From Neoconidiobolus thromboides FSU 785 (Eukaryota; Fungi; Entomophthoromycota), in assembly GCA_025603075.1 (NCBI GenBank), contig MU626367.1, forward strand, positions 10,261 to 74,260: a DNA stretch of 64,000 nucleotides, read 5' to 3'. This document shows positions 27,544 to 45,991 of this stretch, piece by piece. Numbering within the stretch: position 1 is the stretch's first letter; the number at the start of each line of letters is the position of its first letter. Position numbers and translations under genes: made by a program. The notes under the pieces were generated by a model, which was given only the letters and a program-made list of their open reading frames with translations, ran no database searches and was not told the origin of the DNA.

Positions 27544-27774
27544 AAAAAGTAAGTGAAAATCAAATTATTAGTTAAATAAAAATAAAAATCATTTTAAAAA
27601 AATAAACGTTAGTAAAAAAGAAGATAATGAAAATAAACAGAGGCAGTAATAAACTATAAGGAAATATCAACAATGAAATGGAAAAAATGAAAAGTAATAA
27701 TTTGTTATTATTATTGTTTTTCATTTTCAATTCATCTATTTATTTATTCATTTGCATAACTTTTAATTAATATC

Positions 27775-30700
27775 ATGAAAGAAGAGCTACTAACTAATAA
27801 TAATGACATTGACGATTTAAGTGAAGATGAAGATGAAGATAATTTACTAATAACTAATATAACATTAAAGCAATATTATAAAAGATTAAAAAAATTGATA
27901 TTAAAAAGTCAAAGTAAAAAATTTAAAAAAGAGTTAATTCAAACTTTGAACACCCATGAACTTATCACTCGAGACAGTCAAGAGTTTACCTTATTTATTC
28001 AACTGATATTAGAAGTTATCTTTTGTTATTTGGATTTCATCACCCTAGATGATCAAGATATTGATATATATAATGATATTTTAATGTTATTGATGAATCA
28101 CGAACAATTTCATGTTGACTTAAACTGGAGAGGTAGTTGAATTATTACAGTACAATCAACTGTTTTTAATATTTATTTTTAACTTAGATGAAAAAGGACA
28201 AACTATTCTGTTTAAAGCGACCTGTTTAGATTTAGTAGACAATATCAAAGTACTTATTGAACTAGGTGCTGATCCTACAAAACTAGATAATGATGGTAGA
28301 ACTCCTTTAGCAATAGCTGCTTCTTTAGGCCACGCTGCCTCTTGCCAATTATTTACGAGTCTGGAAAAATATCCCATCAACCAACCTGATCTTCAAGGAA
28401 ATACTCCTTTATCTTTGGCAGTAATAGGAAACCATTTAGATGCTGTAGTACAACTATTGTTAGATGCTAAAGTAAATGTAAATAAGGCGGATTTGGTAAG
28501 TGCTGTTTTGAATTTTATAGTTATGGCTATTTATAATTTTTTAGTATGGCTGGACTCCTTTGATGTTAGCTTCCCATTTGGGTTATTTGGATTTAATTGA
28601 GCCACTCTTGGCTGCTGGAGCAAATCGAGATTTGATAGCACTAAACAAGAAAAACGCAATTGAGTTAGCTCTTGAGAATAAACACAATCCAATAGCCAAA
28701 AGACTTGTGAGTTTTTCCAAAATCAGTGACAAATATAAGCATATACCTAAGCGAGATAAGGACATAACTATAAAAGAGAAAAAGAAGGAGATCAAAAAGG
28801 AAGCTAAAAAAGAGAGCTTCATGAAGTTTGAAGATTCTTTTATGAAAGATTTATCTCTATCCTCTTGTGAGCAATTAGAAATTCAATCTAGATTAAAAAG
28901 AAATTCAAGTTTAGGGAAATCTAGAAATGCTTCTCCAAAAGAAGAAACGATCGATGACAACTCAAGCTTTAGTGAAACTAGGAAATTGGTTAGGAACGGA
29001 ACTTTAAGAAATAGAAAGATATATAATCAACTTGTTGAAAACGAATTACAAATAGAACAAAGTGAAGTGCCATTGAGTAATTTATCAAACAATTTAGAAA
29101 ATGAAGAAGGTCCAAAAGAAGGAATAAGGGCTTACTTCAATTTAAGCCATTTAAATAAATGGGAATATTTCTCTAGATTGCTAACAATCTGTGTTATTCC
29201 GCCTTTCTTGAGTAAATTAGGTGGCATGAAAGACCCACATATACAACAAGCTTGGAGAGAGAAAGTAGCATTATGTTTTATTATTTTAATGATTTCGTTT
29301 GGTCTTGGATTTTTAACTTTTGGGTTTTCTTCAATTATTTGCCAAAAAATTATTCCCATATTTCCAGACCAAGTGGCACGTGATTTTGGTATACATGCAA
29401 ATGGAACCAAATTGATGATTGTAAGAGGACAGCTTTATGATGTGGGTTCTTATTTTCCAGTTGGAAATCATCGACCTATTTTACCATTTGTTGATGAAGA
29501 TTTAAAAGATACTATTGAGCCTTACTATGGACATGATATCTCCCATATATTTCCACCAGATAAAAAGAGTTCGTCTTGTAAGTTTTGGCCCAAAAATTTC
29601 GATGAAAAATGTAAAGGCCTACAAGACGACCCTAAATTACACTGTCATACCTCTGCAGAATCATGGCGTGCGTTAAAAGAACTTTCAATCAAGAACTACG
29701 TCGCATTTTCTTGGGCGAATATTACAAACTCAATCAATAATGATAAACTATTCGTATTTAATGAGAAAGTATATACTTTAAAAGATTACTTTCTAGTACC
29801 TGAAGAAGAGGAAGAAGATCCAGATCTTTATCTCGGTGAGGAGTTGACGGAAGTTTTAAAGTCCTTTATTGGTAGAGATGCTACAAAAGATATATTAAAC
29901 AATAATAAACTAGCTGAGTTAATCCCTTGTTTTGAAGATCAATTGTTGGTGGGCAAGCTGGATGGTACTACTATTGGATGTTTTGCTTCTAATTTAGCTA
30001 TGGTCATTGCTACCTCAATCTTATTAACAATCACCGTTATCAAGTTCCTTGCTGCCATAAGCTTTGATTGGTTCCTTTCCTGGAAGTTAGGAAAAATATC
30101 CAATAAACCTCGTAACAAGAATACCCTTCCTCACCTCTTATGTCTTGTAACTTGTTATTCAGAAGGTGAATCAAGTTTAAAAACAACCTTAGATTCTATT
30201 GCATTGTCCGATTATTATGATAAACACAAAATACTTTTTGTAATTGCAGATGGTGACATCACTGGTTCAGGTAATGAAAAATCTACACCAGATATCTTAT
30301 TAGACATGCTCGAACCCTTAGATAAAGATGAAGAAATTAAACCAAAAGCGTATATTTCTATTGGAGATGCTAAAAAACAAATGAATATGGCGAAAGTTCA
30401 TATCGGAAATTATGTAGTACAAAATGACCGAAGAGTCCCTATGGTGTTGATAAATAAATGTGGTTTGCCATATGAAAGAAATCAACCTAAGGCTGGAAAT
30501 AGAGGGAAAAGGGACTCTCAATTGATATTAATGCGTTTCCTGTCAAACCTATGCTTTAACGAAAGGATGACCCCACTTGAATTTGACTTGTTTGAAAAGC
30601 TTTATCGTTTGACTAATATTACAGCTGATAAATATGAAATGGTATTAATGGTAGATGCAGATACAATGGTACTACCAGATGCTATTTCTAAGATGGTATC

Positions 30701-32342
30701 AGCTATGGAGAGAGATCCAACTGTTATGGGGCTTTGCGGTGAAACTAAGATTGAAAATAAAAGACAAAGCTGGGTGACGATGATTCAAGTGTATGAGTAT
30801 TATATATCTCATCACTTAGGAAAAGCATTTGAATCCATCTTTGGTGGTGTTACTTGTTTACCAGGTTGTTTTTGTATGTATCGTATCAAAGTAAGTAAAC
30901 CAGATGGTTACTGTGTTCCCATATTAGCTAACCCTGATATTGTTAAAAACTACTCTTCCAATGATGTATCAACTTTGCATAAGAAAAACCTTTTGTTATT
31001 GGGTGAAGATCGTTACCTAACCACACTAATGCTTAGAGCTTTCCCAAGGAGAAAAATGATTTATGTTCCTAAAGCTATTTGTAAAACAGTTGTACCTGAT
31101 GAGTTTAAAGTACTATTATCACAAAGGAGAAGATGGATTAATTCTACAGTACACAATTTGTTAGAGTTGGTATTAGTACCACAATTGTGCGGTATTTTTT
31201 GTTGTTCTATGCAGTTTGTTATTTTATTAGAGCTTTTGGGAACAGTTGTAATGCCAGCTTCATTACTATTTTTATCTTACTTGATAGTTAGTGCTTTCAT
31301 GGGTCAAGATGTATGGCTACCCCTTTTCTTTATGGCCTGTCTTTATTTTATGCAAGCTATATTAATCGGAGTTACGACACGTAAAGTATCTTACATAGGA
31401 TGGATGTTTATTTTTATTCTAGCTATGCCTATATGGAATTTTGTATTACCAGTCTATTCTTTCTGGCATTTTGATGATTTTTCATGGGGCGCAACTAGGA
31501 AAATTGATGGCCCAGATAACGGCCACGGTGATTCTAATGGGGAGAAGGAAGATGAAATAGAATGCATTGAACAAAAAAAGATTGGTGAATGGCAAAAATT
31601 ATCAAATAAAAAGAAAGAAAAGAGAATGAGTTACCAAGCTAAGGCAGAACAAAATAAGCTTAGAAGCATACGTATTCAAGAACTAGAATTAGCTAAAAAT
31701 TTTAAAGATGATAAGCTTAAACAATATCATCAAACTTTAAATAAGATTAAATTAGTTCAACTCAAAGAAAATAAAATTGAAATTGCACCTAATCATGAAA
31801 CTATAGAAACAACAAAAGCGCTTGCTAGTCCTACTTCGCCAAGCGCTGAGATAACGACTGAGAAGTTGTTCTTTGAGAAACAAATCCATGAAAGACCCAA
31901 ATCCGTTGCAATGGAACAATTGAACACAACACTAAAAAACGTTCCAAAGAAACCAAATAGAAGACTGTCAGTGGATAGAACTGAAGATAATGGGTTTTTA
32001 TTCTTAAATCAAAACAATATCACAGTTGGAATCCAACCACCGTTTAATAATAAACCTACAATAGATACTTTTGATGGCCAAGAAGAGGTTCAAGGAACAA
32101 TATTAAAGGATAATCGTTCCCCTGAGCAGCCTCCTTTAGAGCTAGGGTTATCAAGGTTAAATCTTAAGATTGAATCAAATATTTATGATCGCCCAAAAAC
32201 ATTACCTAGGGGACCTAGACTAGATAATAAATTCAAAGAAATTCAACATGAAGATGAAGGGTTTGATAATAGTAGCATCTCGAAACCTCTTCAAGTGCAT
32301 ACAGTTAAAGGAAAGCGAGTATCTCGGGACATGGATTTTTAA
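27775..32342 (+). CDS. Class IV (Chs3-like) chitin synthase with N-terminal ankyrin repeats (3 exons, about 1487 aa)
   Basis: Exons 27775-28132, 28188-28495, 28545-32342 join in frame. Ankyrin motifs GQTILF, GRTPLAIA, GNTPLSLA, GWTPLMLA; AWREKVALC, cytochrome-b5-like region (IVRGQLYDV), TCYSEG, NRGKRDSQ, VDADT, CLPGCF, LGEDRYLT, QRRRW, WHFDDFSWG. Confidence 0.9.
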
Positions 32343-32448
32343 ATTGATAGTAAATAAATATTTTTTTATATTAAATGTATTATTTTTATAACGAATAATT
32401 GATAAATAATTTTAAAAAATAAAGACAAAAATAAAATTATTAACGTTT

Positions 32449-33054
32449 TCATTGCTGTAAAAATGGATTGCTAATTTCAATAGCTTCCTCTTCAGGATGA
32501 ATCAATACTACAGTAGGGCCACGACATACTAGTAAACCTAACTCTCTAGTTTTATCTGAACCTTTGGCTTTATGAAAATATAAGTTTTAAATTGTATATA
32601 ATTGAAATAATCTTACTATTGCTTTCATTTGAATCCGCTATTAACAAGTTAAAGATTAATATTTTATATTAAGATTTAAAATGATTTTGCTTTACCTCTT
32701 ATAATTTCTATAGTATGGTCTAAAACCAAGTTTAAAAGGGGGTCGAACCCTTTTAAAATACCAGAAACTAAAAATTAGGTCATTGAATTTGAAAAGTGAA
32801 GGAAAAAGTAATTTACCTTCTCTGCCACCTGAAAATTTAACATGTACTTTTTTTTCTAAAAATTTAGAAAGATCCAATATCGACTCTTTCTTCTTCTTAG
32901 GTTTATCTAAATTATCCTTATTTCTATCGCCGTTATTGTTTGAATTTCCTCCTCTTCCTCGAGTGCTATTTCCTCCTCTTCCTGTACCACGTCCCTATAC
33001 ATTTAATCAGTTTTATTCTTTATTATTTTATTTCATCATTACTCTTCCTGACAT
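32449..33054 (-). CDS. LSM7: U6 snRNA-associated Sm-like protein LSm7 (5 exons)
   Basis: Spliced product MSGR|GRGTGRGG..KKKKESILDLSKFLEKKVHVKFSGGRE|VSGILKGFDPLLNLVLD..|..TRELGLLVCRGPTVVLIHP..ISNPFLQQ*. Confidence 0.9.
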
Positions 33055-35252: not shown

Positions 35253-35699
35253 ATGGAATATAAATTAATTGGAAAAACGCCTTATAGTTATCATAACTCA
35301 CAACGATTAACACAATGTATAATAAGTATTACGACTGTATTAACCATGACTCCGTATTTAAAACAAAATAGCTTTTGTATAGCTTTATTAGCGATAAGTT
35401 TAACTTCTTTTTTATGCTCTAGTGTCTTTTTAGAAATAGAAACTTGGTGTAAAAAATATCGCAGTCACTTATTACTTGTTTTAATGATCCCAATGGTTGA
35501 GCCTCTCATCTCTTTGTTTATTTCTTTTATGTGGCTGCTTTTAGCCGTCGTAGCTCCTATTCATGCAAACCATAAACTCTTGTCACTATCTTCACAATGT
35601 GGCTTGTTACTCTTAAATTCTTGTGCTTGGTCTCTGCCAGTTATCATCAACCTTACCGTTATATTCTGGCCTAACTTAAGTATTTTTTGTAAAAAATAA
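35253..35699 (+). CDS. Hypothetical multi-pass membrane protein (148 aa)
   Basis: Open frame with four hydrophobic segments, slightly higher GC than its flanks, A-rich start context; no family recognised. Confidence 0.5.
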   Translation: MEYKLIGKTPYSYHNSQRLTQCIISITTVLTMTPYLKQNSFCIALLAISLTSFLCSSVFLEIETWCKKYRSHLLLVLMIPMVEPLISLFISFMWLLLAVVAPIHANHKLLSLSSQCGLLLLNSCAWSLPVIINLTVIFWPNLSIFCKK

Positions 35700-44853: not shown

Positions 44854-45991
44854 TTAATCCAGTAATAAACTGTTTTTTAAATCCAAAGGTAACATAATAA
44901 ATTCCAAATCAGTAGTAGTGATCCCATCAATAAATTTGTAGCACATCATAATACTACATAATTGACTAACCTGAAAGAAAAATATACCATCTAAATAATG
45001 CTTAAAGGATTGACATAGTGGTATTGATAATAAAGATAAAAATAACAAGCCTGATAAATAGAATAAATAACCTATAACAATATCGCCTAAACAATAATAA
45101 CAATAATTAATAATAGTAATAATAGTAATAATAGTAAAATAAAATTAATGGCTAATATTATATTACTATTTAATAGATAGAATTTACCTAATGCCCATCG
45201 GTTTTCAATATAATAAAAAGTAAAACATAATTGAGATATCATATATAATGTAATTAATAAATTGGGTAATAATAAATGAAGAAACCATAATAAAGATGGG
45301 TTTTTGGAATCTAATCCCCCCATGTTTTTAATAGTCAATATACTAATTAAAAACATTATTAAAAATAAACTTAATGAAATGAGCTTGATGTACTAAGAAT
45401 AATAATATTAATGTTAATGTCAGTTTAAGGATATAATAATGAAGAACTTACTAAATTGATTCGATTAACTTTTAATATGAATGGAAAATTTAACAATCCA
45501 GTTAAAAATAAAAAGATTGATAAACTTAAATTCAAAGAAGTATTTAAAAGTACTAAAAACTATAATAATGTTATTAGTTTCATATAACAATACAATGTCT
45601 AATTAAACTTACTGTATAAAACCCTGAATTTGATGGTATGATATTTGTAATAGTTACTGAATCCACAGTCAACATAAATAAATAGAAATAAAAAAAAATT
45701 ATCATATTTTTAATCACTAGTAATTTGTCATTAATAAAAAAGTAATTTATTATAATATTACTAATACTTACCTTCTGTCATTGTTTTCTTTTTTAAATTA
45801 TATAAAATAATTGACAACATAATAAAAGCAATTAAATAAATAAAAAAATAACAATATTCAAATAGATAGGAATTAAACCATTGATAAGTACGAGTATAAC
45901 ATTTGGTTGATAAGCCGGTGGAATTGTTGAGTAAATTACAAATACTTAATGCACTTGAATCACATACTTCAATGTAACTACCAAATTTCAT
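44854..45991 (-). CDS. CHS7: Chs7-like chitin synthase export chaperone (5 exons, about 289 aa)
   Basis: Exons 45991-45772, 45716-45613, 45559-45452, 45392-45188, 45086-44854 sum to 870 nt in frame. MKFG..VC..L.IC..CY.R..N..LF N-terminus; RWALGD; HYLDGIFF..C..MMCYKFIDGITTTDLEF matches the Chs7 C-terminal signature (HYLDGxFF..MMVYKYWDSITxEDLEF). Confidence 0.85.

What the first reader, a model, noticed from the sequence alone, without database searches (positions are those of the whole stretch)
27775..32342. Ankyrin-repeat domain fused to a class IV chitin synthase
Seen: four full ankyrin repeats plus a capping repeat precede the CHS core. The last full repeat (YGWTPLMLASHLGYLDLIEPLLAAGAN) is in the same uninterrupted 3.8-kb exon as the QRRRW catalytic domain, so the fusion does not depend on my splice model. 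An acidic N-terminal leader and a basic, Ser-rich linker flank the repeats. Known: fungal CHS accessory domains are typically myosin motor (class V/VII), cytochrome-b5-like and DEK_C; class IV enzymes rely on separate partners (Chs4/Skt5, Bni4, exomer) binding the cytosolic N-terminus. Inference: a built-in protein-interaction module that may localise or activate the enzyme. I do not recall this architecture as a standard CHS class but cannot confirm novelty.
Basis: partly seen in the sequence, partly recalled or inferred. Interest (0 to 1): 0.85.

Follow-up and report, generated by a model that had tools for sequence, protein, structure and literature searches.

The report
Ankyrin-repeat chitin synthase, conserved clade
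This is a real, expressed fungal gene that joins an ankyrin-repeat protein-binding module to a chitin synthase. The same design occurs in many early-diverging fungi as a clade next to the classical class IV enzymes, and the papers I could search do not discuss it.

Summary
A three-exon gene (27775-32342, +) encodes a 1487-aa protein. It has an acidic leader, five recognisable ankyrin (ANK) repeats, a basic Ser-rich linker of about 155 aa, and a complete division-2 chitin synthase (CHS4/b5-like domain, Chitin_synth_2, DADT, EDR, QRRRW, SWG).

RNA contigs run from about 27647 through the ANK region into the synthase, and both introns are seen spliced exactly as modelled. One caveat: the main contig of the best-matching run keeps intron 2, which would stop the frame at 28600.

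The architecture is not unique. At least 28 deposited proteins carry the same collinear ANK module. They come from Entomophthorales, Basidiobolus, Zoopagales, Kickxellales, about 14 Glomeromycota genera, Endogone and Calcarisporiella. The Entomophthora muscae orthologue encodes ANK plus CHS in a single uninterrupted ORF.

On the catalytic core, all ANK-bearing enzymes form one clade (100/100 support). That clade is sister to canonical class IV, not inside it. No Dikarya, chytrid or Mucorales hit carried ANK.

The only literature trace I found is a supplementary-table line in Liu et al. [quoted passage not shown] CHS classification papers and a 2025 review do not mention it.

The scan also noted this same stretch in an overlapping window (s1-259493). 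The function, a flexibly tethered partner-binding module for targeting or activation, is inferred and not shown.

The parts
27647..27774 (+). 5' untranslated leader, with two short upstream ORFs (ATG at 27673 and at 27678)
   Evidence: RNA contigs of two runs begin at 27647 (X1, preceded by adapter letters) and 27651 (X7). The upstream ATGs were read from the sequence.
27775..28132 (+). Exon 1: acidic leader (residues 1-30, pI 4.05) plus a helical region of about 90 aa with no detectable homology. The sixth, N-terminal ANK repeat of the clade consensus is degenerate or absent here.
   Evidence: hhalign against the family profile gave probability 0.2%. Exon 1 is spliced to exon 2 in RNA.
28133..28187 (+). 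Intron 1 (55 nt, GT..AG)
   Evidence: Skipped in the 4888-nt contig of X1 and in a contig of X3. A loose end in X9 at 28132 continues with exon 2 letters.
28188..28495 (+). Exon 2: three ANK repeats
   Evidence: Pfam Ank E 4.9e-14 and Ank_2 E 9e-14. Collinear with 20 homologues.
28496..28544 (+). Intron 2 (49 nt, GTAAGT..TAG). Retained in the main contig of run X1; if retained, the frame stops at 28600.
   Evidence: Spliced in X7 and X8 contigs of a relative about 94% identical. Retained in the X1 contig. The spliced junction restores a canonical ANK repeat that aligns without indel to all homologues.
28545..28703 (+). Start of exon 3: the last full ANK repeat (YGWTPLM motif) plus a degenerate capping repeat
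   Evidence: Pfam Ank at residues 1-30 (E 8.1e-5) and Ank_2 at 2-56. The W and M of the motif are invariant in 16 aligned family members.
28704..29168 (+). Basic, Ser-rich linker (about 155 aa, pI 9.18), probably disordered
   Evidence: Composition. The equivalent segment of the E. muscae orthologue has pLDDT below 50.
29259..29345 (+). First predicted membrane helix, directly after the conserved QAWREK motif
   Evidence: Hydropathy scan, model residues 461-489. The motif is invariant in the family alignment.
29700..29954 (+). CHS4 (cytochrome-b5-like) domain typical of division-2 chitin synthases
   Evidence: PF22997, E 5e-12
30111..31598 (+). Chitin_synth_2 catalytic domain with DADT, EDR and QRRRW (31122-31136), then SWG
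   Evidence: PF03142, E 3.9e-228. Motif positions.
31611..32342 (+). Basic, low-complexity C-terminal tail (about 243 aa) and the stop codon
32343..32567 (+). 3' untranslated region, overlapping the 3' end of the convergent LSm7-like gene
   Evidence: The X1 contig runs on to 32567. A minus-strand-type joint (CT..AC) lies at 32567/32617.

Best explanation
The locus is one expressed gene of an entomophthoralean-type fungus. It encodes a membrane chitin synthase of division 2 whose cytosolic N-terminus carries a folded module of five ankyrin repeats. A disordered basic linker of 90-155 residues joins the module to the first membrane helix.

The gene belongs to an old, vertically inherited clade of ANK-bearing chitin synthases. 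The clade is present in all three subphyla of Zoopagomycota, in Glomeromycota, and in Endogone and Calcarisporiella. It is the sister group of canonical class IV (Chs3-type) enzymes.

Shown:
- the fusion in the ORF, in RNA and in orthologues;
- intact catalytic motifs;
- one clade containing every ANK-bearing CHS recovered here;
- conservation of the ANK module.

Inferred: the ANK module is a built-in docking site for one or more cytosolic partners that control where or when the enzyme works (ER exit, vesicle sorting, anchoring at growth sites, or activation). It would be functionally analogous to the myosin motor of class V/VII enzymes, or to the trans-acting Chs4/Bni4/exomer partners of yeast Chs3. 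The W and M of the YGWTxLM motif in the penultimate repeat are invariant in the 16 aligned members and are not part of the generic ankyrin consensus as I know it. That motif is the best candidate for the contact surface.
For: Gene and domains.

Transcript:
- X1 contig of 4888 nt, depth 108, covers 27647-32567 with intron 1 removed.
- X7 contig of 1130 nt from a close relative has both introns removed at exactly the modelled sites, and an X8 contig has intron 2 removed.

Orthologues with the same collinear ANK module:
- 22, more (Coemansia, Entrophospora, Cetraspora, a second JGI protein).
- The alignment across the exon 2/3 junction has no indel.
- In E. muscae the ANK repeats and the CHS lie in one 3432-nt ORF.

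Phylogeny:
- Careful IQ-TREE, 42 rows x 805 columns: ANK clade 100/100, class IV clade 100/97, sister groups.
- With Coemansia and chytrid sequences added, all 23 ANK rows stay in one clade, SH-aLRT 99.

Structure: ANK residues 7-162 have pLDDT 80-90 with five helix pairs; the linker 163-251 has pLDDT below 50.

Constraint:
- 16 synonymous against 5 non-synonymous differences in ANK codons versus organism C.
- D104, W108 and M112 of the E. muscae numbering are invariant in 16 sequences.

A Chs7-type export chaperone gene lies 12.7 kb away.
Against: No experiment or interaction data exist for any member, so the partner-binding role is an argument from what ankyrin repeats generally do.

The dominant contig of the best-matching RNA run keeps intron 2. 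That would truncate the protein after the third repeat (stop at 28600) and uncouple the ANK module from the synthase.

Exon 1 has no detectable homologue, and its substitutions are 6 synonymous to 7 non-synonymous. The true N-terminus is therefore less certain.

Six clade members lack ANK in their deposited models. At least one Diversispora pair may be a real loss, which would show that the catalytic part can persist without the module.

The synonymous/non-synonymous count uses only the 34 best-supported differences listed by the tool.
Confidence: 0.7

Rival explanations
1. The ANK module acts within the enzyme rather than on outside partners. It would be an autoinhibitory lid or an oligomerisation element that docks on the catalytic or b5-like domain of the same or a neighbouring subunit and gates activity.
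For: The long flexible linker would let the module fold back onto the cytosolic face. The ANK module has stayed with this catalytic-core clade across phyla. From general knowledge, solved chitin synthases are dimers and the N-terminus of yeast Chs3 contributes to oligomerisation.
Against: No contact information was available: the structure tool returns no inter-domain error map, and pTM is only 0.50. No coevolution test was run.
Confidence: 0.2
2. The fusion is conditional. Retention of the 49-nt intron 2 is the main state in the sequenced strain. Most transcripts would then encode a 256-aa ANK-only peptide (or be degraded), and full-length ANK-CHS would be made only under some conditions. The intron would work as an on/off switch.
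For: The single high-depth contig of run X1 (99%+ identical to the window) has intron 1 removed but intron 2 kept. No contig in X1-X4 shows the 28495/28545 joint. The retained intron shifts the frame to a stop at 28600 (ORF 28415-28600).
Against: Assembled contigs keep one path and drop the other, so they cannot give proportions. The spliced form is seen in two runs of a close relative. The spliced reading is the only one that matches all orthologues. The E. muscae orthologue has no intron there at all.
Confidence: 0.1
3. The ANK region and the synthase are two neighbouring genes joined by an assembly or annotation error.
For: None found. Several deposited homologues lack the ANK part.
Against: The last ANK repeat and QRRRW share one ORF. 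RNA contigs cross every junction. The same order and spacing occur in more than 25 independent assemblies. E. muscae has one ORF. The ANK-less models begin at or after the first membrane helix, as truncated predictions do.
Confidence: 0.01

Closest known systems
Class IV chitin synthases (S. cerevisiae Chs3, Aspergillus ChsD, Exophiala Chs4)
   Same: Division-2 core: Chitin_synth_2, a CHS4/b5-like domain ahead of it, QRRRW/EDR/DAD motifs, no myosin motor and no DEK_C. Identity is 55-60% over the catalytic part. A Chs7-type chaperone gene lies nearby.
   Different: Separate sister clade with full support. The N-terminus carries five to six ankyrin repeats. No class IV hit from Dikarya, Mucorales, Mortierellomycota or chytrids carries them.
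ANK-bearing chitin synthases already deposited (Entomophthora muscae P0001, Basidiobolus ranarum P0003, Rhizophagus irregularis P0021/P0025, Endogone P0012, Coemansia P0296 and others)
   Same: Same domain order, same position of the ANK module, same YGW motif, and the same clade. P0001 is 60% identical by BLASTP and 70% over the tree columns.
   Different: The window's exon 1 leader is unrelated to theirs, and its first repeat is degenerate or absent. Several of these entries are named 'ATP-dependent RNA helicase' in their records.
Rozella allomycis EPZ33276.1, the one ANK-CHS recorded in the literature (Liu et al. 2017, PMC5353729, Tables S2/S3)
   Same: Listed there with PF12796, PF13637, PF00173 and PF03142 and classed as CHSIV.
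   Different: I could not fetch its sequence, so its membership of the clade described here is untested. The paper treats the domain as a rarity found in a single protein.
Class V/VII myosin-motor chitin synthases
   Same: Division-2 synthases with an N-terminal cytosolic module fused on. For the myosin motor, a CHS classification paper describes a role in intracellular trafficking and site-specific chitin secretion (PMC5122149). This is the best functional analogy.
   Different: A different module (motor versus repeat scaffold) and a different clade; they were used here as the outgroup.

Membership tests
Chitin synthase, division 2 (Chitin_synth_2 type) | PF03142 catalytic domain above the curated cut-off | tested here: met
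   E 3.9e-228, 758.8 bits against a cut-off of 27
Chitin synthase, division 2 (Chitin_synth_2 type) | Catalytic motifs D,D,D / EDR / Q(R/Q)XRW and the SWG motif | tested here: met
   DADT at residue 926, EDR at 1043, QRRRW at 1082, SWG at 1202 of the 1487-aa model
Chitin synthase, division 2 (Chitin_synth_2 type) | Cytochrome-b5-like / CHS4 domain N-terminal to the catalytic domain | tested here: met
   PF22997, E 5e-12. PF00173 itself was not detected in the window but is detected in some clade members.
Chitin synthase, division 2 (Chitin_synth_2 type) | Chitin-polymerising activity | not testable with these tools
No division-2 structure exists in the PDB copy; the nearest entries are division-1 and oomycete enzymes at E 2e-20.
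Class IV in the strict sense (Chs3/ChsD/Chs4 clade) | Falls inside the clade that holds the named class IV enzymes | tested here: not met
   It falls in the sister clade. ANK clade 100/100, class IV clade 100/97; the same holds with chytrid class IV sequences added.
Class IV in the strict sense (Chs3/ChsD/Chs4 clade) | No myosin motor and no DEK_C domain | tested here: met
   Neither was found by Pfam
ANK-bearing chitin synthase clade (unnamed) | Five to six ankyrin repeats between the N-terminus and the first membrane helix, collinear with other members | tested here: met
   Pfam. Alignment without indels to 20 members, with the module at about residues 85-257 in most of them.
ANK-bearing chitin synthase clade (unnamed) | Invariant W and M of the YGWTxLM motif in the penultimate repeat | tested here: met
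   The window has YGWTPLM. W108 and M112 are invariant in the 16-sequence alignment A2.
ANK-bearing chitin synthase clade (unnamed) | Catalytic core groups with the other ANK-bearing enzymes | tested here: met
   Sister to E. muscae P0001 (96/88) within the 100/100 clade
Ankyrin repeat fold | Stacked helix-turn-helix pairs of about 33 residues | tested here: met
   Five helix pairs at pLDDT 80-90 in the model of the orthologue. The window's own ANK region was not modelled, because a spliced protein cannot be given by reference.

The most novel reading that the evidence does not exclude
ANK-bearing chitin synthases are an ancient CHS class in their own right that has not been recognised. The class would already have existed in the common ancestor of Zoopagomycota and Mucoromycota, perhaps as far back as Rozella, and would later have been lost in Dikarya and Mucorales. 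In it, a built-in ankyrin adaptor would take over the targeting or activation job that yeast Chs3 leaves to separate partners. Retention of intron 2 might add a switch between the fused and the truncated product.
Probability: 0.3. Interest if true: 0.6.

Novelty: new variant of a known kind. Interest (0 to 1): 0.45.

Why it matters
Work on how chitin synthases reach the right place on the cell surface rests almost wholly on yeasts and a few filamentous Dikarya.

A conserved synthase with its own protein-docking domain offers a one-gene handle on that question in lineages that are poorly studied. These include arbuscular mycorrhizal fungi, insect pathogens and mycoparasites.

It also shows that CHS classifications built on Dikarya miss a whole clade.

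The practical value is modest. The genes are already in public databases and carry domain annotation. What is new is recognising the clade and its distribution, not discovering a new kind of molecule.

Tried and rejected
- **ANK-region search.** I searched the protein database with the ANK region of P0007 alone. The result was swamped by large generic ankyrin proteins, whose scores add up over many repeats. It added only one new ANK-CHS (P0202).
- **Family-alignment search.** Same problem, and no new members.
- **Exhaustive profile search.** It also mixed giant ankyrin proteins with synthases. Only the matched-range columns were usable. They yielded about ten 50%-identity clusters with both parts, which I named through.
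- **Exon 1 against the family profile.** hhalign found no similarity. I dropped the idea that the window keeps the sixth, N-terminal repeat in recognisable form.
- **Assembly or annotation chimera.** Rejected on the ORF, the RNA and the orthologues.
- **Strict class IV membership.** Rejected on the tree.
- **Sequence search of the PDB.** No solved division-2 synthase exists, so no structural inference on ANK docking was possible.
- **Literature.** Seven full-text searches found no paper describing the fusion. The library holds open-access papers and bioRxiv only, so a description in a subscription journal cannot be excluded.
- **Organism.** I did not establish the organism myself. An earlier unchecked note of the scan names Neoconidiobolus thromboides.
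Full report
**What is there.**
The window is very AT-rich (about 25% G+C). Between 27775 and 32342 on the + strand lies a gene of three exons, read directly from the sequence:
- exon 1, 27775-28132;
- a 55-nt GT..AG intron;
- exon 2, 28188-28495;
- a 49-nt GTAAGT..TAG intron;
- exon 3, 28545-32342.

The joined CDS is 4464 nt and encodes 1487 residues without an internal stop.

Pfam gives the following:
- The exon 2 translation matches Ank (E 4.9e-14) and Ank_2 (E 9e-14).
- The exon 3 ORF matches Ank at residues 1-30, the CHS4 (b5-like) domain at 386-470 (E 5e-12) and Chitin_synth_2 at 523-1018 (E 3.9e-228).

The catalytic motifs DADT, EDR, QRRRW and SWG are all present. The leader is acidic (pI 4.05 over the first 30 residues). 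The 155-residue linker after the repeats is basic and Ser-rich (pI 9.18).

**Is the fusion real?**
Three independent lines say yes.
1. The last full ankyrin repeat and QRRRW share one open frame, so no splice model is needed.
2. RNA contigs support it.
   - In run X1 (99%+ identical to the window) a single 4888-nt contig at depth 108 runs from 27647 to 32567 with intron 1 removed. Adapter letters precede its first base, so this is probably close to the 5' end.
   - In run X7, from a relative about 94% identical, a 1130-nt contig covers 27651-28129 / 28186-28494 / 28544-28878. Both introns are removed exactly where modelled.
   - Run X8 shows the intron 2 joint as well. A loose end in X9 shows the intron 1 joint.
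3. The closest orthologue (Entomophthora muscae, P0001) is encoded by one uninterrupted 3432-nt ORF holding both the repeats and the synthase.

**A caveat worth recording.**
The X1 contig keeps intron 2, and none of X1-X4 shows the 28495/28545 joint. With the intron retained, the frame ends at 28600 (ORF 28415-28600). The product would then be an ANK-only peptide of about 256 residues.

Assembled contigs keep one path and cannot give proportions. This may be an assembler choice, ordinary incomplete splicing, or a real regulatory isoform.

The spliced reading is the only one that continues the ankyrin periodicity. It also aligns without any indel to all 20 homologues compared (..NKADL|YGWTPLMLASHLGY.. 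against ..DHQDRYGWTPLMLSAHLGF.. in E. muscae).

**How widespread is it?**
The first database search already returned 22 proteins with both Ank and Chitin_synth_2 domains. They come from:
- E. muscae and Basidiobolus ranarum;
- Syncephalis fuscata;
- Acaulospora, Paraglomus, Geosiphon, Ambispora, Diversispora, Glomus, Funneliformis, Gigaspora, Rhizophagus and Entrophospora;
- Endogone and Calcarisporiella;
- unnamed JGI and Logan records.

The exhaustive profile search, cluster look-up and Pfam scans added Coemansia (Kickxellomycotina; ANK at 71-233 plus CHS), Cetraspora, Racocetra and more Glomeromycota paralogues. The ESM Atlas has one cluster of 50 members in which all carry Ank and Chitin_synth_2. 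AlphaFold DB has two fold clusters whose representatives align from the first repeat to the end of the synthase.

In these proteins the module sits at about residues 85-257. The family consensus shows six repeats. In the window the most N-terminal repeat is degenerate or absent: exon 1 alone shows no profile similarity.

No hit from Dikarya, Mucorales, Mortierellomycota or chytrids carried ANK.

**Where does it sit among chitin synthases?**
I built trees on the shared core, with columns filled in at least 85% of rows, so the ANK columns were not used.

The careful IQ-TREE analysis used 42 rows and 805 columns, rooted on myosin-type class V/VII enzymes.
- The ANK-bearing proteins fall in one clade with 100/100 support and a stem of 0.46.
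- That clade is sister to a 100/97 clade holding Aspergillus ChsD, Exophiala Chs4, basidiomycete, Mucor and Mortierella class IV enzymes.
- Inside the ANK clade the window pairs with E. muscae (96/88), then a JGI protein, then Basidiobolus and the Zoopagales.
- Glomeromycota form two paralogous subclades, both with ANK. The order roughly follows the species tree.

Adding Coemansia, a second JGI protein and two chytrid class IV enzymes kept all 23 ANK rows in one clade (SH-aLRT 99). The chytrid enzymes fell on the class IV side (quick search, and Coemansia is a long branch).

Six rows inside the clade lack ANK. Five of them begin at or just before the first membrane helix, or after it, as truncated gene models do. 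The sixth has an unrelated 700-residue N-terminus. A pair of Diversispora orthologues may be a real loss.

One origin of the fusion, followed by vertical descent, is the simplest reading. 'Class IV' is right only in the broad sense (superclass IV of Gonçalves et al. 2016, PMC5122149). In the strict sense the membership test fails.

**Anatomy and likely mechanism.**
I modelled the E. muscae orthologue with AlphaFold2 using the 16-sequence family alignment:
- the ANK domain is confident (residues 7-162, pLDDT 80-90, five helix pairs);
- a segment of about 90 residues follows with pLDDT below 50;
- the synthase core is of moderate confidence (overall pTM 0.50).

The picture is a compact repeat domain on a flexible tether at the cytosolic face.

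The module is under constraint. Among the best-supported differences from organism C, ANK codons show 16 synonymous against 5 non-synonymous changes, whereas exon 1 shows 6 against 7 (a partial list, so indicative only). D104, W108 and M112 (E. muscae numbering) are invariant across 16 members. By my knowledge of the repeat, W and M lie outside the generic ankyrin consensus. A conserved binding surface would look like this.

I therefore favour a docking module that recruits a cytosolic partner for sorting, anchoring or activation. This is analogous to the myosin motor of class V/VII enzymes, for which a role in trafficking and site-specific secretion is described (PMC5122149). By my recollection it is also analogous to the separate Chs4/Bni4/exomer partners of yeast Chs3.

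An intramolecular role (autoinhibition or oligomerisation) is the main rival and cannot be excluded with these tools. No solved structure of any division-2 synthase exists to guide it. All of this paragraph beyond the anatomy is inference.

**What is known.**
Seven full-text searches of the open-access library found no paper that describes an ankyrin-chitin synthase fusion.
- Two large CHS classification papers contain no 'Ank' domain mention (PMC4734345 and PMC4141765).
- Gonçalves et al. 2016 has no such mention in text or supplements, and sampled neither Rhizophagus nor Conidiobolus.
- A 2025 review of fungal chitin synthases has zero occurrences of 'ankyrin' (PMC12653383).

The single trace is in Liu et al. 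2017 (PMC5353729). [quoted passage not shown] The main text says the 14 rare domains show no clear distribution pattern. In that paper the ten Conidiobolus coronatus synthases carry no ANK annotation.

I could not fetch the Rozella sequence, so its place in the clade is untested. If it belongs, the fusion predates the split of Rozella from other fungi.

**Verdict.**
The finding is real and correctly described. It is an ordinary member of a family that public databases already hold and annotate by domain. The published CHS classifications I could read appear to have overlooked that family.

I rate it a new variant of a known kind, with moderate interest. It is a tidy, testable piece of evolutionary cell biology rather than a surprise. 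The literature check is limited to open-access papers and preprints.

An earlier unchecked note of this scan (s1-062673) names the genome as Neoconidiobolus thromboides. That fits the tree but I did not test it. The scan also noted this same stretch from an overlapping window (s1-259493).

Noticed in passing
window 45087-45991 (-): A Chs7-type chitin synthase export chaperone gene, split over several exons, lies 12.7 kb downstream of the synthase on the other strand. Pfam PF12271 gives E 8.6e-12 for 45761-45991 and 5.8e-7 for 45087-45356. Whether this linkage with the ANK-CHS is conserved in other genomes was not checked.
   Followed up: partly
window 28496-28544: The 49-nt intron 2 is retained in the high-depth contig of RNA run X1, although intron 1 is removed in the same contig. 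In a close relative (runs X7, X8) intron 2 is spliced. Retention would end the frame at 28600.
   Followed up: partly
window 27673-27772: The 5' leader covered by RNA contigs holds two upstream ORFs before the main ATG at 27775: MKWKK-stop from 27673, and one of about 31 codons from 27678 that ends just before 27775. They could affect translation.
   Followed up: no
window 32343-32645: The synthase transcript contig runs 225 nt past its stop codon into the 3' end of the convergent LSm7-like gene. A minus-strand intron (joint 32567/32617, CT..AC) appears in the same run. The two convergent transcripts therefore overlap.
   Followed up: no
P0001, P0003, P0075 and the Coemansia cluster of P0296 (public records): Several ANK-chitin synthases of Entomophthora, Basidiobolus and Coemansia are named 'ATP-dependent RNA helicase' in their NCBI records, although Pfam finds only Ank and chitin synthase domains. 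This is probably a propagated naming error.
   Followed up: partly
P0015 and P0024 (Diversispora epigaea and D. eburnea): These two orthologous members of the ANK clade start right at the first membrane helix and have no ANK module. They are either a real secondary loss in a Diversispora paralogue or the same truncation in two annotations.
   Followed up: no
window 35253-35699 (+): This 148-aa ORF with several hydrophobic stretches, lying between the synthase and the CHS7 homologue, has no Pfam match at E up to 0.01.
   Followed up: no
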